A DNA stretch of 64,000 bases. Origin: Octopus sinensis (Eukaryota). The notes under the pieces are model-generated. The model was not told where the DNA came from, did not search any database, and worked only from the letters and a program-made list of their open reading frames with translations. Shown piece by piece: positions 208 to 63,799 of the stretch. The stretch is from positions 113,646,001 to 113,710,000 of the forward strand of contig NC_043000.1 of NCBI RefSeq assembly GCF_006345805.1. The letters run 5' to 3'. The first letter of the stretch is position 1. Every line of letters starts with the position of its first letter. The translations under genes and the position numbers were made by a program.

Positions 208-780
208 CAAGAGTTGGCTAAAATAATGGAACCACCTTAAAATTTCAAACAAATTTATTTTAATATAGGGTAGGACAACCTTTGGCAATAAATACAGCCT
301 TAATTCTATGAGGTATGGACTCGTACAAAGTTTGAATTGTTTCCAAAGGAATTTTTTGTCCGTTCTTCAGCTAAAACAGTCTCCAGTTCTTGTAGTGGTG
401 ATGGTGAAGGATATCGACTCCTTACTTGATTTTCTAAAGTGCACCATAAATGTTCAATAATATTGAGATCTGGGGACTGTGGTGGCCAGATATGATGTTC
501 AACTTCACTAGAATGTTCCTCATGCCATTCTGTAACAACTTTAGCTGTGTAAATTGGTACATTATCACCCTGAAAGATTGCGTTTCCCTCTGGAAACAGT
601 TCCGTAACCATAGGATGAATTTGACCAGATAAAATGCTTAAATAGTCTTGACTATTAACTCTGCCATAAAGGGAAACCTTTGGGCCGGCGGATTTCCAAG
701 ATATAGCCCCCCCCCTCAGAACATCACAGCCCTTCCTCCATGTTTAACAGTTGGAAGAAGGCATTCTATCTTAAAATCTC
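208..780 (-). mobile_element. Tc1-family DNA transposon remnant (3' half of transposase plus one TIR)
   Basis: ORF 306-611 has IFQGDNVP and WPPQSPDLNIIEHLW (DD34E motifs). 720-770 reads CLLPTVKHGGRAVMF*G on the minus strand. TA at 206-207 is followed by TIR-like CAAGAGTTGGCTAAAATAATGGAACC. Confidence 0.9.
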
Positions 781-810
781 ACAACGAGAGATATTCAGCA
801 ACAGGGCTTC

Positions 811-1197
811 GTAGTAAAGATTGCTTGCCAACATAACATGGCAGTCCTGGTTTAGGACGAATGGTGCTGTAATTTAACCCCAGGAGACATCGTCTCCAGC
901 TGGCTATACGACACGATCTGTGTCCTTATATTTTCTATATATTTCGAACGGGAATTTGGCAGCACCGCCGCTAGCCGAACAATTATTCTGTGCTGATGAA
1001 GGGAAATCACCCGGAAATCGTGATACACAGATATTGTTTTGAGCTGAGTGGGGGTGCTAGATTCCCTTGTTCGAAAATATAAGGACAGAGATCGTATCGT
1101 ATAGCCAGCTGTAGACGATGGCTCCTGGGGCTAAATTACAGCAACATTCGTCCTAAACCAGGATTGCCAGGTTATGTTGGCATACAATCTTTATTAC
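811..1197. mobile_element. Fold-back element with 125-bp inverted arms and a central hammerhead
   Basis: 811-935 vs the reverse complement of 1073-1197 aligns ungapped with 11 mismatches in 125 nt; pairing continues through the centre. Confidence 0.9.
987..1031 (+). ncRNA. Type I hammerhead ribozyme candidate
   Basis: Stem I tctgtg/cacaga, core CUGAUGA (993-999), extra A, stem II GGG/CCC, G-GAAA, near-palindromic stem III AUCGUGAU, cleavage triplet AUA ending at 1025. Confidence 0.7.
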
Positions 1198-1957
1198 AAT
1201 ATAGAATTTGTTTTGTCTTGGGAGAGACATTATACCAGTAATAGTAATAACACACGCACATGTTCAATTCCACAATGACTCCTCCAAGACACAACAAAAT
1301 TTGTTTCAACATATGAAATAACATCAAGAATCTTACAGTCCTAATAGAAAAATGAAATATAGAATTGATTCTTGACCAATTTCGTTTCAAATTTTGTCTG
1401 AAAATCGATAAACATGAGTCGACAACAAAATTATCGATAAAATAGAATCCTTCAACATACAGAGAATTCAAAAATTACCAGGATTCAAAATCCAATTTGA
1501 GTATATTTTTAGGTTTTATAAATCGAAGAATTTCACATAATGAAGAGCACGTGTTTCCTGTCTTTACTGCTAACTATGGATTCTTTTGGAAGAAGGAACC
1601 AAATTGGCAAATGCCGAATTATATGTTTTTTGCCATTAAACACACACACACACACACAGAGGCATTCATATACATACATAGATGATAATATATATATATA
1701 TATATATATTATAATATATATATATATATATATCTATATTATATATATATATATTATATATATATATAATATATATATACATAATATAAATATACATCAA
1801 AACACACACATACACACACACACATATATATGTACATTTGTACATGTGTGAGCATGTGTGTGCGCGCATGTTTCATATATGTAACTACATAGATAGGTAG
1901 GTATGAAGGAAGGTCGAAAGGCCTGTAGGTAGGGTGAATGTATATATATATATATTA

Positions 1958-8100: not shown

Positions 8101-10790
8101 TTGTTGTTGGCATCCTTTTTGTCTCGGGAGACAATGGAGTTGCGCTTACAATAATCTAGTCCGGCTTTTACATTTCATGTCCTAATACATCTCCTGCTGT
8201 GGCTGTGTAGTCCTATCCTGGACAAACACTCCCTCTGGCAGGTGCCGCAAATGTAGCGAAGACTTTGCCTCGCTAGTTGTAATGTCATACTTTCTTGTTG
8301 ACGTCTTTTCTTGTCTTTCCATTTCTCCTCTCCCTCTATGTCACTTCTTTGTGTTCCCTCTTTTACGGTATGTCGCCAATCTCCACGGTTGCTGGCAACT
8401 GCTTCCCAGTTGGTAATATTGATGTTGCAGGCATTCATGTCCCTTTTACAAACATCCTTGTATCGTAAGAACGGTCTTCCCACAGACCTAGTACCCCTAG
8501 CAAGCTCTCCGTTGAGTATGTCCTTGGGGATTCTGCCACCTTCCATACGGTTAACATGTCATACGTCTTTGTGTGAGGAATGTAAACATGCTTGGGATTC
8601 CTGCTTGCTTGAGGACATCTTTGTTGGGGACATGATTCTGCCATTTGATGCGAAGGATTTTCCGGAGGCAGCGCAGGTGAAAGATATTTAGGCGACGTAT
8701 GGCGTCGTATGGCGTCGTATGGCGTGTGTATGGCGTCCATGTCTCACTTCCATACAGTAGAGTGCTAAGTACACATGCCTGGTAAATCTTCATTTTTGTG
8801 GTCTTGGTCAGCTTATTGTTGTCCCATGCCCGTTTGGAGAGTTGGGCCATCACAGCAGCTGCCTTGCCAATGCGTATATTGAGCTCAGCATCAAGGGATA
8901 GGTTGTAGGTGACGGTAGAGCCAAGATAGGTAAACTTCTCCACCTCCTGTATTCTGTGGTCTCCAATATGTATGTTTGGGATGGTAAGTGTAGCCTGACC
9001 CATGATGTTGGTCTTCTTGAGGCTGATAAATAAGCCAAAGTTGCCACATGCTTGCTCAAAACAGTTGATGAGCCTTTGTAGGGCTTCTTCTGTGTGTGAT
9101 ACGAGAGCGACATCATCAGCAAATAGCATCTGCTTGATCAGGTTGCTTCTGATTTTGGTCTTGGCACGCAGACACGAGAGATTGAACAGTTTCCCATCAC
9201 TTCTACTGTGCAGAAACACCCCATCATCTGATGTCACAAAGGCATGTGACAGCAGCAGCGAGCAGAAGATGCCAAATAATGTAGGAGCAAGGAGACAACC
9301 TTGCTTTACCCCATTTTTTATTTGGAAGGCGGCTGATGTTGAACCATTGTGCTGTATGGTGCCTTGCATATCATCATAGAAAGATGTGATGATCCTCAGC
9401 AGCTTTGGTGGACATCCGTTTTTTTGGAGCAGGATGAAGAGGCCTTTTCTACTTACCAAGTCAGATCAATGAAGGCCATATATAATGGCATTTTCTGCTC
9501 ACTGGACTTCTCCTGAAGTTGGCGTATGGAGAATATTATGTCAATAGTTGATCTACTTCTTCTAAAGTCACACTGCGATTCTGGATAAATTCGAGAAGCA
9601 AGCAGTTGCAGCTTGGACAGGATAATGTGAGCAGAGGCCTTTCCAACAGTGCTTAGAAGAGATATTCCACGGTAATTGTTACAATCACCACGGTCACCTT
9701 TGTTTTTGTAAAGCGTAATGTTAGCATCCCGTATATCCTGAGGAACTGTACCCTCTTCCCAGCACTGACACAGAAGCAGGATGGTGTTTTTGCCGGTTTT
9801 GATGATCTCTAAGGGGATGCCGTCTTTTCCCGGAGCCTTGTTACTTGCAAGGGAGTCAATAGCCTTGGTGGGCTCTGCTATAGATGGCAGACTGTCAAGT
9901 TCACACATGATTGGCAAGATCTTGACACCCTCGATTGCAGCCTCAGCTACCGTGGTCTCTCGTGAGTAGAGATCCTGGTAGTACTCCACCTATATATCCA
10001 TTTGCTTGCTTTGGTCCTTGATGCGATCCCCAGTAGTTGATTTCAGAGGGGCTGACTTGGTTGCGGATGGACTGAGGGCCTTCTTCAAACCGGCATACAT
10101 CCCACGGGTGTCGCCATTGTCAGCAGCTGACTGGATACTCTGACAGATTTCCTGCCAATACCATTTTGCACTGCATCTGGCAGTCAGTTGGGTTTTACTT
10201 CTTGCCTTTCTGAGTTCTTCGAGTGACTTTATAGAAGAATCACTCTTGTATTACATCAGATAACTGTTTCCAGCTCTGAGAGCCCAGCACTGAACAAAAT
10301 CTGGGTTTTGCCTTTCTATCATGCCGAAAGTATCTATTGATGTGGTATACAAAGCTTCCCTGATATAAGTCCACCTACTTTCAGCAGAGGTGGTTGGGCA
10401 GCTACTGAGGGCAACTTTGATAAAAACAGCAAAACATTGTCGCAGTGTAGGGTCGGAGGTTCTGGCAGTGTTAATGCGTGGTCAGCCCATTTTCTTGGAG
10501 TGATGGACTTTTTAGGCAGAATCCTCAACCTGCTTCTCTTCTTATTAGTGAATGATCTGTGTCACAATCCGCGCTGTGGTAACTACGAGTCAGTTGAACA
10601 GAATTCTGAAAGGTCTTCGTGTAATGATGAGATCCAGCTGATGCCAGTGGTGAGATCTTGGATGTCTCCAACATGCCTTGTGGGATGTCTTGTTGGCAAA
10701 GAATGTGTTAGTGATGCACGGGTTATGGTATGTGCAAAATTAAAGTAGTCTCTGGCCATTGTCATTCATGTTGCCAATACCAAAACACAT
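8101..10790 (-). mobile_element. RTE-clade (BovB/Expander-like) LINE, 5'-truncated and frameshifted
   Basis: AP-endonuclease remnant (FGIGNMNDNGQRLL); RT motifs YRGISLLS, GVKQGCLLAPTLF, MLFADD; C-terminal CGTCQRECLSRIGLHSH; 3' end ggatgcc(aac)n at 8101. Confidence 0.95.
8175..9989 (-). pseudogene. Reverse transcriptase ORF pieces of the RTE element
   Basis: ORFs 9453-9989, 8551-9459 and 8175-8546; the KAFD motif is lost at the 9455 frameshift. Confidence 0.9.
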
Positions 10791-13100: not shown

Positions 13101-14075
13101 TCAGGTCATCCCATAAGTTCTGTCCGAATTTAGGATAAAGAATGTTATATTTAATTGAAAGTTAATCATCAATGTACTTTCCCTGATTATCTATGACCTA
13201 CTTGCATCTATTTACAAGATTTTTAATCCCATCAATGTAAAACTCGTTTGGTTTCAAAGCGAAGAACTCTGAAATGTCAGGTTCGACCTCCTCCTGGCTT
13301 GCGAAAGTTGTGTCCCCCTAATAATTCTGTAAACTATGAAAAAAATGGTATCCTGAATGAGTAAGGTCGGGAGAATAAGTTGGATGGAGAAATTTTTCCA
13401 AACTGACCTCTTCGATCTTCTGTGATGTGATCTTTGCAGTATGGGGTTGTGCATTGTCCTGATGAAATATCACTCGTTTTCGACTCACTAAAGCGGCTCT
13501 TTTTTCCTTCAAAGCTTGGTTCAAACGCTCTAATTGCTGACAGTAGACTTGAGCATCGATTGTTGCATTAGGTGGTAACAATATAAAGTGAATTACGCCT
13601 TTGCAATCGCACCAGATAGAGTAGAACCTTTTTCCCATGAAGTTCCCTTCTCGGTTGTGGTTGAGCATTTTCCCTTTTACCAAGCTACTATTTACGACGT
13701 TTAACATTTCGATAGAAAATCCATTTTTCGTCACAAGTCTATCGAAAAAGGGTGAAATGACTTTGCGAGAATGGAGAGAAGAACAGATGTCAACTCGGGA
13801 TTTGCGGTTGCTGTCGGACAATACATGAGGCACCTATTTTCCAAGTTTAGCAGTCTTTCCACGTTGTTGAAAATGACGATGAACTGTTGTATGGTTTGAA
13901 GTTAGCTTTATTGCCAATTCTTCAACTGATAATGACGGATTTTCTTCAAGTAATGCCTCAAGGAGCTTATCATCAAACTCAACTGGACATCCTATTCGAT
14001 CTTCATCTTCAATTTTGCAAACGATCTCCTGCAAGTTCTTTCATTCAAGCACTTTCCCATAAGCTGAGTGTATAT
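13101..14075 (-). mobile_element. Mariner transposase remnant (DD34D type)
   Basis: HTH region, then VPHVLS, FHQDNAQPH and HPTYSPDL in ORFs 13834-14034 and 13318-13833; TIR-like caggtcatcccataagttctgtccga at 13101. Confidence 0.9.
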
Positions 14076-19479: not shown

Positions 19480-20925
19480 GAGCGGAAGCCAAGAACTATA
19501 GACCTATCTCTCTGACCTCACACATCAGCAAGGTCATGGAACGAATAGTCAGAAGGAAGCTGATCACCTTCCTTGAAGAGAATGACTTGCTGCCCGACAC
19601 CCAACATGGTTTCCGACCAGGGAGAAGCTGTTTAACTCAGCTCCTACAACACTATGACTGGGTGCTGAAACGGCTGCTCAACCACTCAAATGTGGAAGTG
19701 ATATATCTCGACTTTGCAAAGGCCTTTGATAAAGTCGATCATGGAATGATATGTCACAAACTGCGTGATCTCAACATAGTTGGAAAACTGGGAGAATGGC
19801 TTCATGACTTTCTGAAGGATAGAAGTCAGGTGGTAGTAGCCAATGGGGCCACCTCCATTAACAACAAAATAGTGAGCGGTGTTCCGCAGGGCACTGTTCT
19901 GGGACCACTACTGTTCATAATGGCCCTCTCAGACATGCTCTCAGCCACGCAGAGAGCCACGATCACAAGTTATGCAGATGATACAAAAGTTTCACAGGCA
20001 ATACAGAACCCTGAGGACACTAAACACCTGCAATGTGAGCTGGACGAAATATACAAGTGGGCTGAAAAGAATAGCATGCAGTTCAATGCTGGAAAGTTTC
20101 AAGCTTTATACTATCAGCATGCAAAACTGAATACACTGGACCCGGAGGGATTGCAATCCCAGAGGCACAATCAGTGCGTGACCTGGGTATTCACATGAGT
20201 GATGACGCGACCTTTCATGTACATGTTGCTAAACTGACAATGAAATGTAGACGGCTGGCTGGATGGATTCTTAGAACCTTTAGAACAAGAGAACAAGAAA
20301 CCATGATGGTCCTCTGGAAGACACTTGTCTTAAGCCACTTTGACTATTGCTCTCAGCTATGGTCACCATCTAGTGTCAAGTTGATCACAGAACTTGAGGC
20401 GATCCAACGAAGCTACACAAAGAAGATAGCCTCTATGCAGAATGTAAGCTACTGGGAAAGACTCAAGAGATTAAAAGTATATTCCCTGGAGCGTAGGCGG
20501 GAAAGATATGCCATAATATACATCTGGAAGATCCTGGAGGGAAGTGTCCTGAACTTTGGCATCGAGAGTTACGCAAATGCCAGAACTGGGCGCCACTGCG
20601 TGGTGCCTAGGACTCCAAACCTGCCATCAAGATGTAGGACAAGATTCTGTGATAGCCTGGGCTTCCGAGGCCCACAGCTCTTCAATATCCTCCCGAAGAA
20701 CCTGAGAGACCTGCATGGGGTGGATACAGATGTCTTTAAAATGAAGCTGGATCTCTTCCTGTCAGGTGTCCCAGATGAACCAACTTCACGGCAGGAGGGG
20801 CAGATGAGGGCAGCTGCATCGAACTCTCTCATGCACCAAATAGCAGTTGCTAGAAAGCCTCCATGAAGTGAAACCAAATGGCGGTGCCCCAGCATGGCCA
20901 CAGCTCATAAGCTGAAACTAGAATC
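19480..20925 (+). mobile_element. CR1-type LINE, 5'-truncated, with 3' end
   Basis: QHGFRPGRSCLTQLL, YLDFAKAFDKVDH, SGVPQGTVLGPLLF, YADDTK, then LERRRER; (ATCA)n tail. Confidence 0.95.
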
Positions 20926-31458: not shown

Positions 31459-34400
31459 ATGCTTAAATTAGGTTGTGTGAATGCGCGTGGCTTGGCGTCG
31501 GCTTGGAAGCAAGGTTACCTTCTAAACGACATCAAGTCACTGAACTTGGATATAGTAGCTATCAGGGAAACCAGAGTCAGCAAGCCGCGGGCTCTCACGT
31601 CCATGTTTGGCGATCAATTTGACATTTATTTTCTCCCTGTCTGCCGAACATGGGCGGTGGAGGTACCGCGGTGCTTTTTCGAAAGAGTCTAAATGTAAAA
31701 GTAAGAACATATTCTAGACCCGGAGGGTAGGCTGGTGTTTGGACGAGAGGCAGAAATGGGTGTGCATTCCGTCTGATGGCAGTTTATGCACCGTCCTTAA
31801 CGGGTCGGGCAGATTTCTTCAGATGTCTAGAGGTTTTCCTGGGTACGTCTAGACCTTTACTGTTAGTAGGGGATTAGAACGCTACCTTGGACACGCATCT
31901 AGATTATGTGGGAATGGATAGGAATAGAAGGGGGTGTAAGTGCCTCAAAGACCTACTCAGACGTTTCCATTTGTCTGACTGGTTCCGACTCGACCATCCG
32001 AACGTGCCAACGTGGACTTGGACAAACCGCGTCGGATCGTCGAGATCTTATCTAGATAGAATTCTATGCAGGACAGCGGATAAGGATAGTGTAGGATGTC
32101 CACAATTTAAAATAGTCCGCTACACAGATCACAAATTTGTTACGTGTACACTCGACTTAGATAAGACACATAGACAGGGTCCCGGTTACTGGAAACTGAA
32201 CACGTCGCTTTTAGCGCGACAGGTTTACAGGAACTGGATTAGCGAGTTAATTAAGAGGGCGCTGACGGGAGCCGGCGTTAACAACCGCTGGTGGTTCACC
32301 CTGAAAATGGCAATAACATCGGAATCAATTAGGTTTAGCAAGGAATTAGCGATAGATCAAACAGAGTAGGGGGAGACTTGGTTAAGAAACTAGAAGAGGC
32401 ACTTACCACTGGCAGCGCAACCAACGTGCTGGCTGCGAGGATGGCCCTCGAACAACACCTCAACACCAAGCACGAAGGTTGCGTCGTCAGAGCTAAAATG
32501 CGTGCCTTAAGGAACAAAAGGATCGAAGCTGCGCGAGAGGCGCGGGTAGCGGAGGCGCAGCGTGCCAACAGAGCCACCATTCGGTCTCTAATAGATCAAC
32601 AGGGATGCAGTTTACTCGAACCCGAAAGCATGTGTGAGGCCTTTCAACCGGACTTTGCTCGACTGTTTGGTGCGAGTGGTGGGTCGGATCGCGGGATGGA
32701 TTTCAGTACCTACCTGACCGACCTGCCGCGGCTCTCGGCAAGCGAAGCGGAGTGTTGTGAAAGTCCCATCACAGCCGCTGACTTGTGGGATGCGATGGCG
32801 GGCTGCGCAAGGGATAAGTCGCCTGGATTGGATGGTTTACCCTACGAGCTGTATTGTCAAATGCCAGACTTGTTTGGCGACCTCTTGGCATCAGTCTACT
32901 GCAACTGGCAACAAAACGGGAGAATCCCCGGTTTCGTGAGCCGAGGTGCAGTGACGTTGCTGAAGAAAGACTCAAACAAGGGGAATTTTATAGATAATTT
33001 CAGGCCCATCACTCTGCTGAACGCAGATTTGAAAATTTTGGCCAAAGTAATAGCCGAGAGGTTGGCGCTTGTCATTGGTAAACTGGTTGACAGGGCGCAA
33101 ACATGCGCCGTGCCGGGCAGAACCATACATGACAACCTCCATCTGATGCGCGACATTGTAGACAGGGTAGTTAAGGATCCTGGCATTTGGATCAGTCTAA
33201 AGCCTTCGATAGAGTCGACCATCGGTACTTGGCGGCCGTCCTCAGGGCGGCTGGCTTCGGTCCCGTCTTCCGCGGTTGGATCGCTGCCTTGTATAGCGGC
33301 ATCCGATCGGTGATTCGGGTGAACGGTCACCTGTCGAAACCGTTTGACATCACGCGTTCGGTCCGTCAGGGGTGTCCCCTGTCGGCGCTTCTGTATGTAT
33401 TGACTCTCGAGCTGCTACTACGGAAGCTGGCGACACTGAGGGGCATCCCACGGGAACTGGGTTGCAGGACGAGCGTGTCGGCATATGCGGACGATGTCAC
33501 CGTCATAGTGTCCAGCGACAACACATCCAGATGATAGGCGAGGCACTAAGAAAATACGAAACGGTGACGGGAGCGAAGATTAACCCGGAAAAGTCAGTGG
33601 GTTTGCTACTCGGTACCTGGAGAAGCAAGCCCATGCCGTCCGACTGCGGCTCAGTAGTGGGACGCTGGACGGACGGACCGGTTAAATTGCTTGGGGTCTG
33701 ATTCAGTCCGGACCTCCAAATGGATAAGAACTGGGACGAGATCACGATTAGAGTGGTCGCTCTCAGCCAAACATGGGCCGAGAGAAAGCTGTCTCTAAAA
33801 GGCCGGGTGGAGGTGGCGAACGCATACATCACATCCGTCATCGATTACCGCCTGACCGTCGTACCTTGTCCCGACGCCACCATCACCAAACTGGAACGCA
33901 TACTCTTCCGCTTCCTGTGGAAGGGTGGCGTTCCGATGGTGAGAAAGTCCATTTGCTGTCAACATCCGTTGAATGGAGGACTGGGCATGCCGTGGTTGAT
34001 GATGCGCGGGCATGCGCTGAGACTGCGGCATCTCTGGAACTTCATCGACGACGGTGAACAGGTGTGGGCGCCGTTTGTGAGGCGCGCCTTCCCGCAGCTC
34101 GTCTCACTGACCGAACTGCAAACGTGGATCAAGAAGAGACCGAAACTGGGCGATTGGCACCGAGAGTGCCGCCAAGCTCTACAGCAGCTCTGCCGACCGG
34201 GGTCAAACTTGTGCAACTTACAAACGACTAAAGCGTTCTATAGAGGACTAGTGGAGGGGAGGTCCGACGACACACTCAGGGCAAACCTGGGCGTCGACGA
34301 GAAATTCCTAACCCGCCTGCTCAGGACGACGTTCGGGCCGGGGCCTATGGATAACTTCCAGAAATCCCTGGCTTGGCAGTGCTATCGAGATGCACTACCT

Positions 34401-34849
34401 GTTCGGGAGAAGAGCTACAGGCATGGTTCGAAAACCATCACCGGACCGACCTGCCCGAGATGCGGTCAGAGCGACGAAACCGTTCTGCACGCACTCGTGC
34501 AGTGTCCAGATATTTCAGAGCTGTGGACCTTCGTCGAACAGCTGTTGTCGCGTGTAGGTCGGGCCCGCCTATCGGCCGAGTCTATCGTGAATATTGTTCC
34601 ACGACCTTCCTTTAAACGGGAAGGGAAAACGGTGCGAAAGAATGTGTGTGGTGGACGCATTTGAAAGGACTGCAAACAAACACATTCCTCTCTGGTCAGT
34701 GTCTCGTCAACGTTTTCAAGTACCACTTGAAAAGGAGGATGAGAATAGAGAGGAAGGCTTTGTCGAACGAATGTTTTAATAAAATGTGGGTAAAAGTGGC
34801 AAAAATGGTCAGTATGAAAGACGATACTATTTTAAGCATAAATCTGTAA
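31459..34849 (+). pseudogene. Tx1-type ORF2 (endonuclease/RT), multiple frameshifts
   Basis: ORF pieces 31459-31692, 31887-32369, 32378-33313, 33187-33534, 33372-33701, 33720-34664 and 34646-34849. Confidence 0.9.
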
Positions 34850-41466: not shown

Positions 41467-41610
41467 TTATCTTGGAGGCTGTCCTCATAGCAGCCAGTTT
41501 CCAGAAAAGAAACATTATTAAATGCTTATGTAATATTGTATTATTTGATTACAAAATAAATATAAGTTTTAAAAAAATTGTCAACTTTTATTATATACAT
41601 TACATATATT

Positions 41611-41765
41611 GAAGTGATGGTTTGTTGCCAACTTAATGTGGCATTCCCAGGAAAGGGGAGAAAGCTACTGCAATTTAGCCCCAGGAAACATCGTTTCCAG
41701 TTGGCTACGTGACACAAGCATTCTGTGTCCTAAAGTTTTCAAACAGGGGAGATAAGCACCTCCAC
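41611..41765 (+). mobile_element. Diverged single-arm copy of the 811-1197 fold-back family
   Basis: ttgccaacttaatgtggcattcccagg...aatttagccccaggaaacatcgtttccagttggcta...ctgtgtcc...agcacc is collinear with 811-968. Confidence 0.75.
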
Positions 41766-42249
41766 CAAGCAAAGCCAGCTTCCAGAGACTATTTTCAGAG
41801 TTATTGCTTTTCATGACTCTGGTGTATTTCTAACGTTGTATATCAGTGAATTTATTTCACTTGAAATTCTGTTAGCTTTCAAAGGCGAATAAGCATCGAC
41901 AGCTAGCAAGCTAAGCTACTCTGAGGGATTTAGAAATGCAATATTTATAATAATTATATATATTGTTTCTGGTATAAATTAATATTACGAAGAAATATAA
42001 CCGGTCCCTGGCACATAGCAAAAAATAAACTGCCGGTACGCCACATCAGACAGTTTGAGAAGCACTGTTCTAGATAGTATAACAGCAATGGCGAACACAT
42101 TGAGACAGATGGATCTAAAGACTGCCAGTGAGCATCAGAATAATTATAGCAACTGTATTTAAATATAACCGAAATTTATATATCGTCTTTGGATTTAGTT
42201 TGCAAGATTCTTTATGTGAGTTCGTGTGTTGAAGCATATTCGGTTGTGT

Positions 42250-42490
42250 CTGGGGAGAGTCTTTCTCTTCTAATGCCTTATAATTTAACAAACTCATTGG
42301 TAAAATTTCCATTCAATTCTTTTTTATTTTCTAAAATGTTCGTTGCGTCTTGCAATCTTTCCAAGTAATTAATTGAAAAGGTTGTAAGACGCAAGGAAAA
42401 TTTTAGAAAAATAAAAAAGAAATAAGTAGAAATTTTACCGGTGAGTGTTTTAAATTATAAGACACTAAAAGAAAATGACTCTTTTCCTGA
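42250..42490. repeat. Imperfect ~240-bp palindrome centred near 42370 (probable old fold-back MITE)
   Basis: cttataattt...ggtaaaattt...ttgcgtctt mirrored by aagacgcaa...aaattttacc...aaattataag. Confidence 0.8.
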
Positions 42491-43109: not shown

Positions 43110-43390
43110 TTTACATGCAAAATTTAGAGGACTGACCACTAAAAGTGGACAGCGTGTATGCCATTTTCCACGAAGAATGTGTTCTCAAGAAAAAAATTGA
43201 GAACACATTCTTCGTGGAAAATGGCGATTTTGACGTCTATATCTAGCATACAGGCAGTCCACTTTTAGTGGTCAGTCATCTAAATTTTGCATGTAAAAAT
43301 TTTTAATCTTCGGATTTTTTAAAAATATGCTAGGCCACTGGTTTAATTGATTAATATCAATTTCTACCCTTATTTAATTTTATATATAAA
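43110..43390 (+). mobile_element. Relative of the 63262-63799 unit with an inverted 5' duplication
   Basis: 43197-43390 is homologous to the junction region of the 506-bp unit; nested IRs of 41 bp (43110-43150/43257-43297, 1 mismatch) and 28 bp (perfect). Confidence 0.8.
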
Positions 43391-63178: not shown

Positions 63179-63261
63179 CTATATACATACATACATCCAT
63201 ACATACCTATAAATGTGTATATATATATATATATAGATATACATACATACATACCTACATA

Positions 63262-63799
63262 TATATATACCAATTAAGGACTGAACACGAAAAGTGGACA
63301 GTCAACATGCTAGATATAGACGTCAAATCGCCATTCACCACAAAAGATTATGTTCCTCAGATCAACTCAACACAAAACCATAGAAAACAAGCAAAATAAC
63401 GTGAAAATAATAAATAATTACCCATGTACTAAATTAGTTTCAGCTGTTATTTTCCGCAAGGAAAACTGCAGCCATCATCAGCATGGTCCGTTATAAATGT
63501 AATTTGCTGGACTAGATGCAAACACGGTACCGAAATATCGCGTGCATGGAGTTCAGCCTATTACATTTGAATATATCTTTCAAATGCCTTTACCTTGGCG
63601 CGTTGGAACCCGAGAAAACTAGACTGCAGCTAATAATTAGCAGCAGTTAATTTATCGGTTAGAGAACATATTTATTTATATAAAATTAATTAAGGGTAGA
63701 AATTGATATTTATCAATTAAGACCAGTGGTCTAGCATATTAAAAAAGAATCCGAAGATTAAAATATTTATATATACCAATTAAGGACTGAACACGAAAA
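63262..63799 (-). mobile_element. 506-bp hammerhead-bearing unit with a 32-bp terminal direct repeat (retrozyme-like)
   Basis: tatatataccaattaaggactgaacacgaaaa at 63262-63293 and 63768-63799; HHR inside; homologue at 43197-43390. Confidence 0.75.
63422..63486 (-). ncRNA. Type I hammerhead ribozyme
   Basis: Minus strand CCAUG-CUGAUGA-U-GGCUG cag UUUUCC uugc GGAAAA uaa CAGCU-GAAA-CUA auu UAG-U-A/CAUGG: all three stems and the core are present; GUA triplet. Confidence 0.88.

What the first reader, a model, noticed from the sequence alone, without database searches (positions are those of the whole stretch)
811..1197. Rod-like fold-back element capped by a hammerhead ribozyme at its exact apex
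Seen: 125-bp arms with 11 mismatches and no gaps. Pairing continues inward (agcacc/ggtgct, aacaat/attgtt at 978-983/1033-1038, tctgtg/cacaga) and the innermost helix is stem I of a CUGAUGA...GAAA hammerhead (987-1031). Stem III (AUCGUGAU) is self-complementary only intermolecularly. Established: Penelope-associated HHRs often have an extra A after A9 and short palindromic stem III regions that work as dimers. Inference: the ~390-nt transcript would fold as one rod ending in a ribozyme junction. That differs from an ordinary MITE (no ribozyme) and from an ordinary inverted Penelope pLTR pair. It could be a viroid-like/retrozyme-like non-autonomous element, or a MITE that captured an HHR. One deviation is an A1000-G1013 opposition closing stem II. 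No TSD was seen.
Basis: partly seen in the sequence, partly recalled or inferred. Interest (0 to 1): 0.82.

Follow-up and report, generated by a model that had tools for sequence, protein, structure and literature searches.

The report
Hammerhead ribozyme retroelement, inverted duplicate insertion
The 387-base hairpin with a hammerhead ribozyme motif at its tip is real, but it is most likely two head-to-head copies of the tail of a ribozyme-carrying retroelement of a known kind, not a new rod-shaped mobile element.

Summary
The arms 811-935/1073-1197 are 125 nt long with 11 mismatches and no gaps. Pairing continues inward to a type I hammerhead (HHR) at 987-1031(+) with an intact catalytic core. 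The one flaw is an A1000·G1013 mismatch at pair 10.1-11.1. A covariance model built from four experimentally active retrozyme HHRs ranks it first in the window (17.3 bits, E≈0.013). No Rfam hammerhead model reports it.

A second, ~70%-identical family member on the minus strand (41605-41826) has a decayed HHR followed by one arm. Its helix I is kept by three compensatory pair changes. It is not a fold-back. The arm ("X", ~175 nt) is therefore the 3'-terminal segment downstream of the cleavage site, and all three copies share the same outer end. A second shared segment, Y, follows X at locus 1 but precedes the HHR at locus 2, which suggests a partial-tandem junction. The arm mismatches show no bias towards keeping RNA pairs.

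The best reading is a Penelope-like or non-LTR-retrozyme-type insertion with an inverted 5'-truncated copy abutting the HHR-bearing direct copy. It is a new member of a known kind. An unrelated HHR repeat (506-nt unit) lies at 63259-63799.

The parts
811..992 (-). Left arm, X': an inverted copy of the ~175-nt 3'-terminal segment X. Its outer end (811) is the family's 3' terminus. Its inner end (986-992) coincides with the complement of the HHR cleavage-site end of X.
   Evidence: nhmmer X profile matches 994-807 on the minus strand, E=2.9e-56.
987..1031 (+). Type I hammerhead motif: helix I 987-992/1026-1031, CUGAUGA 993-999, helix II 1000-1013, GAAA 1014-1017, helix III 1017-1024, A17=1025. 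Predicted cut between 1025 and 1026.
   Evidence: Sequence. Model R1, built from four active retrozyme HHRs, gives 17.3 bits, E~0.013, full length, top hit in the window. Descriptor chance rate is 0.027 per window. No Rfam hammerhead hit.
1000..1013 (+). Helix II hairpin: A1000·G1013 mismatch at 10.1-11.1, then three G-C pairs and loop AAAUCA.
   Evidence: mismatch flagged in the alignment. The locus 2 equivalents form A-U.
1026..1203 (+). Right arm, X: the direct copy of the segment from the HHR cleavage site to the family's 3' terminus (...CTTTATTAC, plus AATATA shared with locus 2).
1226..1370 (+). Segment Y, following X after about 23 nt. It is homologous to a segment that lies upstream of the HHR at locus 2, so it is read as the start of the next unit (a pLTR-like partial-tandem junction X|Y).
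   Evidence: (1274-1366 matches 42264-42173, 74%, E=8e-12).
41605..41778 (-). Locus 2: a solo copy of X, ~70-73% identical, with the same 3' terminus.
   Evidence: E=3.7e-62.
41779..41826 (-). Locus 2: decayed HHR (CCAGAG UCAUGAAAAGCAAUAACUCUGAAAAUAGU CUCUGG). The core is broken. Helix I is kept at 6/6 Watson-Crick pairs, with compensatory changes at 3 of the 6.
42170..42309 (-). Locus 2: segment Y, 346 nt upstream of the HHR remnant. Its 5' part lies in a 228-nt palindrome (42256-42482, 82%).

Best explanation
The locus is a decayed, non-coding insertion of a hammerhead-bearing retroelement of the Penelope-like-element / non-LTR-retrozyme kind. The family's unit carries a canonical-architecture type I hammerhead about 172-178 nt upstream of a fixed 3' terminus.

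In RNA, the ribozyme would cut between A1025 and C1026. [quoted passage not shown] That role is inferred from what is established for such elements and is not shown here.

The hairpin exists because two copies of the 3'-terminal segment X lie head to head:
- A direct copy (993 or 987 to 1203) keeps the ribozyme core and runs on into Y, the start of the next unit, as in a pseudo-LTR partial tandem.
- An inverted 5'-truncated copy (811 to 986-992) starts at the same canonical 3' terminus. It stops at, or within 6 nt of, the position complementary to the cleavage site.

Because X begins with the 3' strand of helix I, the inverted copy either supplies or abuts the 5' strand. The ribozyme core therefore ends up as the hairpin loop.

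The likely origin is priming of reverse transcription from both nicked target strands, as shown in vitro for a PLE. The two cDNAs would then be joined at the only self-complementary spot, helix I. The inverted copy may have been templated by an already self-cleaved RNA. These origin steps are inference.
For: (1) The HHR is real and homologous between two loci. The core boxes, A15.1-U16.1 and H17 are all present. It is the top hit of a model built from four active retrozyme HHRs, at 17.3 bits against 9.5 for the next hit. The chance rate is 0.027 per window. Locus 2 aligns through the core and keeps helix I through three double changes, U-A>C-G, U-A>A-U and U-A>A-U, with none broken.
(2) The fold-back is not a family trait. 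Locus 2 has one arm, and its native upstream sequence is unrelated to X' (z=-0.6). It does not fold as a rod.
(3) All three X copies end within 6 nt of the same point. This is expected from a fixed reverse-transcription start site (PMC11167929).
(4) X and Y are the only shared segments. They keep the same relative orientation but occur in permuted order at the two loci, as expected for tandem or pLTR junctions.
(5) The arm mismatches are neutral-looking, with 6 transversions out of 11.
(6) PMC8557442 describes exactly this layout for PLEs: an inverted 5'-truncated copy adjacent to the upstream pLTR. PMC11167929 shows that a PLE protein nicks and extends both strands.
(7) A second HHR repeat in the same window also shows more-than-unit length and a permuted fragment. 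Elements of this kind have therefore inserted here more than once.
Against: - No PLE reverse transcriptase or GIY-YIG ORF is near either locus. Scanned ORFs matched only RVT_1, zf-RVT and Tc1/mariner-type transposase domains; none was GIY-YIG.
- The regions between Y and the HHR are not homologous at the two loci. The unit is therefore not defined, and Y could be a separate repeat.
- The HHR has the canonical retrozyme-like layout, not the minimal PLE layout.
- For the junction to fall exactly at the ribozyme by chance is improbable (about 1-2% of a ~700-nt unit, my estimate). The mechanistic link I invoke is untested.
- Identity falls from 91% in the outer arms to about 70% near the tip, which a simple duplication does not predict.
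- Only three arm copies were available. No genome-wide data could be obtained.
- No Rfam hammerhead model reports the motif.
Confidence: 0.55

Rival explanations
1. A single, circularly permuted unit of a rod-shaped non-LTR retrozyme. The 387 nt (1026-1197 joined to 811-1025) would be one circRNA-derived monomer, copied once round starting from the loop opposite the ribozyme.
For: The size is within the 170-400 nt reported for metazoan retrozymes, and those circles leave the HHR free at one end of a self-paired structure (PMC7229834). The HHR has the canonical retrozyme layout. Monomers are common. Helix I is 6 bp followed by an internal loop (UAU/U), as in canonical type I motifs.
Against: Locus 2 shares HHR+X but has no complementary partner and does not form a rod. 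There is no tandem repeat here. At 91% pairing with neutral-looking mismatches, the arms look like a DNA duplication rather than a roughly 65-70%-paired natural rod. X runs on into Y.
Confidence: 0.15
2. A solo HHR-X insertion that was later duplicated in inverted orientation by a DNA-level event (replication template switch or hairpin-primed fold-back inversion), unrelated to retrotransposition.
For: The arms diverge neutrally. The centre is more scrambled than the arms, as is often assumed for unstable palindrome centres (my own knowledge). The 6-bp helix I could seed a DNA snap-back.
Against: The inverted arm stops exactly at the family's canonical 3' terminus rather than running on into the flank or Y. 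That points to an independent initiation at the element's end.
Confidence: 0.15
3. A MITE or fold-back DNA transposon that captured a hammerhead in its loop.
For: Long terminal inverted repeats, small size and no coding capacity.
Against: No TSD. The second family copy is a single arm with its own HHR remnant and is not a fold-back. There are no further copies in 64 kb.
Confidence: 0.04
4. A chance hammerhead look-alike in the loop of an ordinary palindrome, or an assembly artefact.
For: No Rfam hammerhead hit. A competing fold that sequesters the core is predicted to be 6.5 kcal/mol more stable than the HHR secondary structure.
Against: The descriptor chance rate is 0.027 per window. A homologous remnant with helix I covariation exists at locus 2. 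The arms differ by substitutions only, which is unlike long-read palindrome artefacts.
Confidence: 0.03

Closest known systems
Canonical type I hammerheads of metazoan non-LTR retrozymes (Cervera & de la Peña 2020, PMC7229834), especially axolotl HHR_Amex2
   Same: 6-bp helix I, 4-position helix II, and helix III of 2 bp closed by a near-palindromic tetraloop. It fits the CUGANGA / GAAAY / RUH core. Amex2 likewise has a mismatch (U·U) at the base of helix II and still cleaves, better as a dimer. The carrier is non-coding and self-paired.
   Different: No tandem array in the window and only one ribozyme. 15.2-16.2 is U-A rather than C-G. The 10.1-11.1 mismatch is A·G. No recognisable loop 1-loop 2 contacts. 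The near-perfect 180-bp helix is unlike natural retrozyme rods.
Complex tandem/inverted insertions of Penelope-like elements (Craig et al. 2021, PMC8557442; Frangieh et al. 2024, PMC11167929)
   Same: A direct partial copy (pLTR) carrying an HHR near the 3' end, preceded by an inverted 5'-truncated copy that forms an inverted repeat. A fixed 3' terminus a short distance downstream of the HHR. AT-rich sequence at two of the three 3' ends.
   Different: No RT/GIY-YIG ORF at either locus. The HHR is not of the minimal PLE type. The inverted copy stops at the ribozyme, so a single HHR caps the hairpin. I did not find this layout described.
Minimal PLE hammerheads (Cervera & de la Peña 2014, PMC4209133)
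   Same: Type I topology and a palindromic helix III region compatible with dimers. That paper also notes dual HHRs 100-700 bp apart on opposite strands.
   Different: PLE min-HHRs have a long helix II (6-8 bp), a short helix I, an unpaired base after A9 and a conserved G10.1-C11.1 pair. The motif at 987-1031 has none of these. The second motif, at 63422-63486, does have the first three.
Twin-priming inversions of LINE-1 (my own knowledge, not tested here)
   Same: Two cDNAs primed from opposite target strands and joined head to head at a short stretch of complementarity.
   Different: A different retroelement class. Here the join coincides with a ribozyme helix.

Membership tests
Hammerhead ribozyme, type I | Conserved core: C3 U4 G5 A6 N7 G8 A9, G12 A13 A14, A15.1-U16.1, H17 | tested here: met
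   All present at 993-999, 1014-1016, 1017/1024 and 1025. They align to the core of model R1.
Hammerhead ribozyme, type I | Three helices around the core, with helix I open | tested here: met
   Helix I is 6 bp, helix II is 3 G-C pairs plus A·G, and helix III is 2 bp plus a tetraloop. Helix I covaries with locus 2 at 3 of 6 pairs.
Hammerhead ribozyme, type I | G10.1-C11.1 pair closing helix II | tested here: not met
   A1000·G1013. Locus 2 has A-U at this position. An active natural HHR with U·U here is reported (PMC7229834).
Hammerhead ribozyme, type I | Reaches the Rfam gathering score for a hammerhead family | tested here: not met
   No hit at gathering score on the whole window. No hit at E<=10 on 601 nt or on 81 nt.
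Hammerhead ribozyme, type I | Similarity to experimentally active type I HHRs under a covariance model | tested here: met
   R1 was built from coral, mussel and two axolotl HHRs. The motif scores 17.3 bits, E~0.013 (rough calibration), is rank 1 of 128 kb searched, and the next hit scores 9.5 bits.
Hammerhead ribozyme, type I | Self-cleavage at the predicted site | not testable with these tools
   A nearest-neighbour fold favours a competing structure by 6.5 kcal/mol. This is not decisive.
Non-LTR retrozyme | Tandem repeats, each unit with a type I HHR | tested here: not met
   There is one HHR and no tandem copy in the window. Only an X|Y junction hints at a partial tandem.
Non-LTR retrozyme | Non-coding, highly self-paired unit of about 50-1000 nt | tested here: met
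   No ORF longer than 58 aa. The rod folds at -251.8 kcal/mol.
Non-LTR retrozyme | Expressed as linear and circular RNA | not testable with these tools
   No RNA data were available.
Penelope-like element (autonomous) | ORF with a telomerase-like RT and a GIY-YIG endonuclease | tested here: not met
   No long ORFs around either locus. Nine non-repetitive long ORFs were scanned with Pfam: five match RVT_1/zf-RVT or transposase domains, three match nothing, none is GIY-YIG. The six-frame Pfam scan of the flanks was not completed.
Penelope-like element (insertion architecture) | pLTR partial tandem with an HHR near the 3' end, plus an inverted 5'-truncated copy upstream | tested here: inconclusive
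   The geometry fits. However, the downstream body and second pLTR are missing: SSRs start at about 1640 and there is an N gap at 2659-2758.
MITE / fold-back DNA transposon | Terminal inverted repeats flanked by a target-site duplication, with family copies sharing both ends | tested here: not met
   No TSD. The other family copy has one arm only.

The most novel reading that the evidence does not exclude
The fold-back may be a working unit rather than an insertion scar. It would be a ~180-bp hairpin RNA whose loop is a self-cleaving ribozyme. [quoted passage not shown] Alternatively, the 387 nt may be the genomic image of a viroid-like rod circRNA. A more modest novel reading is that the inner end of the inverted copy is a genomic footprint showing that self-cleaved RNA served as a reverse-transcription template in vivo.
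Probability: 0.08. Interest if true: 0.8.

Novelty: new member of a known kind. Interest (0 to 1): 0.35.

Why it matters
The role of hammerheads in PLEs and retrozymes is still open. PMC11167929 found no reads ending at the cleavage site, and PMC8557442 notes that HHR-less PLEs thrive.

A family whose truncated copies can be mapped against the cleavage site would give a simple genomic test of whether self-cleaved RNAs are used as templates. If 5' ends pile up at C1.1, cleavage happens in vivo before reverse transcription.

For annotation, the locus is a caution. A single ribozyme at the tip of a near-perfect hairpin can arise from ordinary head-to-head insertion and need not mark a new class of rod-shaped element.

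Tried and rejected
- **Rfam.** Searches on the whole window at gathering score, and on 601-nt and 81-nt slices at E<=10, gave no hammerhead family, only noise such as C/D snoRNA look-alikes from UGAUGA. A C/D snoRNA reading is rejected because there is no box D.
- **Copies elsewhere.** A scan of metagenome contigs with the best-conserved arm 19-mer gave seven loci, all bare 19-20-nt chance matches.
- **Source genome.** Exact look-ups of three window ORFs found nothing on record. Homologues of a LINE RT ORF were at most 67% identical and came from corals, molluscs, amphioxus and fish, so the taxon stays unresolved and the source genome is evidently not in the protein collection. I therefore did not spend a search on the element's short ORFs.
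- **tRNA-derived SINE reading of the arm.** GAGCTGAGTGG and GTTCGAA resemble A and B boxes. This is rejected because the start-to-start spacing is 27 nt rather than about 44, the boxes are not conserved at locus 2, and ARAGORN finds no tRNA.
- **Insertion into the Tc1-like transposase remnant (about 250-805, minus strand).** The N-terminal half does not resume after 1197, so no empty-site or TSD test was possible.
- **Weak second hammerhead-like hit inside Y (1287-1333, minus strand; 9.5 bits, E=2.4).** Rejected because the core is UUGAUGU at locus 1 and UUUAUGU at locus 2.
- **Homology of the bodies between Y and the HHR, of the sequence upstream of the HHR, and of either locus to the second HHR repeat.** None was above shuffles.

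Full report
**Context.** The window is animal-like nuclear DNA. GC content is 37%, and about 12% of the window is simple repeats. There is a 100-N gap at 2659-2758. It holds ORFs with reverse-transcriptase domains, of the LINE kind by my reading, and Tc1/mariner transposase remnants. I could not determine the taxon. Three exact ORF look-ups found nothing on record. The nearest relatives of a LINE RT were at most 67% identical and taxonomically scattered.

The arms 811-935 and 1073-1197 are 125 nt long and 91% complementary, with 11 mismatches and no gaps. The whole 387 nt folds as one rod (-251.8 kcal/mol, z=-25.6). Pairing continues inward with indels, down to a 33-nt loop (993-1025). That loop reads as a type I hammerhead together with its closing helix:
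- helix I: UCUGUG/CACAGA
- CUGAUGA box
- a GGG/CCC hairpin closed by A1000·G1013
- GAAA box
- helix III: A-U and U-A around a CGUG loop
- A17, so the cut would fall at 1025/1026.

**Is it a hammerhead?**
- Every invariant core position is present.
- A relaxed descriptor finds such motifs at 0.027 per shuffled window.
- I built a covariance model from the four retrozyme HHRs whose self-cleavage is documented in the supplement of PMC7229834 (coral, mussel, two axolotl). It puts 987-1031 first among both strands of the window at full length: 17.3 bits, E≈0.013 with rough calibration, against 9.5 bits for the next hit.
- Against this, no Rfam hammerhead family reports it, even on an 81-nt slice at E<=10.
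- The 10.1-11.1 pair is A·G rather than G-C.
- A nearest-neighbour fold prefers a competing structure by 6.5 kcal/mol.
- A natural HHR with a U·U mismatch at the same position does cleave, best as a dimer (PMC7229834).
- The helix III region AUCGUGAU can form an 8-bp self-duplex with two G·U pairs (-5.4 kcal/mol). It can equally close as 2 bp plus a tetraloop within one molecule.

I conclude that it is a genuine hammerhead-derived motif with uncertain present activity.

**A second copy changes the picture.**
- BLAST and nhmmer find exactly one more family member in 64 kb, at 41605-41826 on the minus strand.
- In that orientation it reads CCAGAG-UCAUGAAAAGCAAUAACUCUGAAAAUAGU-CUCUGG, followed by about 175 nt that are 70-73% identical to the right arm.
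- Its core is broken. Helix I is still 6/6 Watson-Crick, with both partners changed at three pairs relative to locus 1. Helix II also shows one G-C to A-U swap and an A-U pair where locus 1 has A·G.
- This is family-level support for the ribozyme fold. It also shows that A1000 is position 10.1, not an inserted base.
- This copy has no opposite arm. The sequence upstream of its HHR is unrelated to X' (z=-0.6). The region does not fold as a rod (z=-2.4; no long inverted repeat).

The fold-back is therefore a property of locus 1 and not of the family.

**Anatomy of the family.** The arm, X, is the segment from the cleavage site to a fixed 3' terminus. The left arm, the right arm and locus 2 all end within 6 nt of the same point. 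The latter two share AATATA beyond it.

A second segment, Y, is the only other homology between the loci (74% over 93 nt, E=8e-12, extendable to about 140 nt). At locus 1 it follows X after about 23 nt. At locus 2 it lies 346 nt upstream of the HHR, in the same relative orientation. This permuted order is what a tandem or pseudo-LTR junction (X|Y) gives.

The stretches between Y and the HHR are not alignable, so the unit is not fully defined. What should follow at locus 1 is lost in microsatellites and the assembly gap.

**How the hairpin most likely arose.** Craig et al. (PMC8557442) describe PLE insertions as partial tandems forming pLTRs. They are often preceded by an inverted 5'-truncated copy that creates inverted repeats, and the HHRs sit near the 3' ends. 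Frangieh et al. (PMC11167929) show three things about a PLE protein. It nicks and extends both target strands. It starts reverse transcription at a fixed internal site. That site lies a short way downstream of the HHR, roughly 85-92 nt by my subtraction of their coordinates.

Locus 1 fits this pattern as inverted X', then HHR-X (the pLTR), then Y. The inverted copy begins at the canonical terminus (811). It ends at 986-992, which is at or within 6 nt of the complement of the cleavage site. Because X starts with the 3' strand of helix I, the inverted copy recreates or abuts the 5' strand, and the core becomes the loop.

Two origin steps are inference: joining at helix I, and templating of the inverted copy by self-cleaved RNA. 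The 6-nt ambiguity cannot be resolved from one locus.

Two further observations fit a DNA duplicate that has drifted neutrally. The arm mismatches are 6 transversions, 3 A·C and 2 G·U. The tip is more scrambled than the arms (about 70% against 91%). Neither fits a rod kept by selection on RNA.

**PLE or retrozyme?** The motif has the canonical layout that PMC7229834 assigns to non-LTR retrozymes: 6-bp helix I, 4-position helix II and a short palindromic helix III. It is not the minimal PLE layout of PMC4209133. No RT/GIY-YIG ORF is nearby. A 2026 preprint argues that animal retrozymes derive from PLE pLTRs, have consensus lengths of 51-972 bp and often occur as monomers. The two labels therefore shade into each other. 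I file the element as a non-autonomous member of that continuum. Tandem arrays were tested and not met, and circRNA could not be tested.

**Rivals.**
- A permuted monomer of a rod-shaped retrozyme (0.15) has the right size and topology. Locus 2 and the neutral-looking mismatches argue against it.
- A later DNA-level fold-back duplication (0.15) fits the scrambled centre. The inverted arm stopping exactly at the element terminus argues against it.
- A MITE that captured a ribozyme (0.04) fails on the missing TSD and the solo copy.
- Chance or an assembly artefact (0.03) fails on the homologous remnant with covariation and on arm differences that are substitutions only.

**In passing.** An unrelated, well-formed HHR lies on the minus strand at 63422-63486. 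It has an unpaired U after A9, a long interrupted helix II, a 5-bp helix I and a 4-bp helix III, which is the PLE-type layout. It sits in a copy of 1.07 units of a 506-nt repeat (63799 to 63259, with 32-35 nt of terminal redundancy). A fragment at 43201-43386 spans the unit junction. As a circle, the unit is 65% paired (z=-3.5). This independent family with the same more-than-unit signature supports the general reading.

**Verdict.** The element is a new member of a known kind, and interest is moderate to low. The one feature worth following genome-wide is whether copy ends cluster at the cleavage site.

Noticed in passing
window 63259-63799 (minus strand); HHR at 63422-63486; related fragment 43201-43386: A second, unrelated hammerhead motif of PLE-like layout: CCAUG CUGAUGA U GGCUG...CAGCU GAAA CUAAUUUAGU A CAUGG, with the predicted cut at 63427/63426. 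It lies inside 1.07 units of a 506-nt repeat with 32-35 nt of terminal redundancy. A fragment at 43201-43386 spans the unit junction, so copies are permuted or tandem-derived. As a circle the unit is 65% paired (z=-3.5). Neither Rfam nor model R1 finds it.
   Followed up: partly
window 42256-42482: A 228-nt near-palindrome (82%) at the 5' side of segment Y at locus 2. This second fold-back is associated with the same family but has no ribozyme at its tip. A short inverted repeat (1205-1221/1284-1302) occupies the equivalent place at locus 1.
   Followed up: partly
window 1287-1333 (minus strand), inside segment Y: The second-best hit of the retrozyme-HHR model (9.5 bits, E=2.4) lies 90 nt from the element. 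The sequence is conserved at locus 2, but the core is non-consensus at both loci (UUGAUGU / UUUAUGU), so it is probably not a ribozyme.
   Followed up: yes
window ~250-805 (minus strand): The C-terminal half of a Tc1-like DDE transposase (Pfam DDE_3, E=3.9e-12) ends at about the left boundary of the fold-back. Its N-terminal half does not resume after 1197, so the element sits at a truncation point rather than in a clean insertion site.
   Followed up: partly
window 936-992 versus 1026-1072: Identity between the arms drops from 91% to about 70% near the tip. The left arm carries an extra ~10 nt (a GAAATATATA-like duplication). At positions where the outer arms differ, the left arm matches locus 2 at 6 sites and the right arm at 1. 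The two arms may therefore come from different source copies.
   Followed up: partly
whole window; N run at 2659-2758: The window is very rich in microsatellites (about 12% by a simple count), including (GATA)n, (TA)n, (CA)n and (GA)n. It has one 100-N scaffold gap. It also holds several decayed retroelement ORFs with RT-type domains at 8551-9989(-), 19536-20198(+) and 32378-34664(+) (RVT_1, zf-RVT; neighbouring ORFs 20174-20866 and 31887-32369 had no Pfam match), and a mariner remnant at 13318-13833(-). The source organism was not identified.
   Followed up: partly
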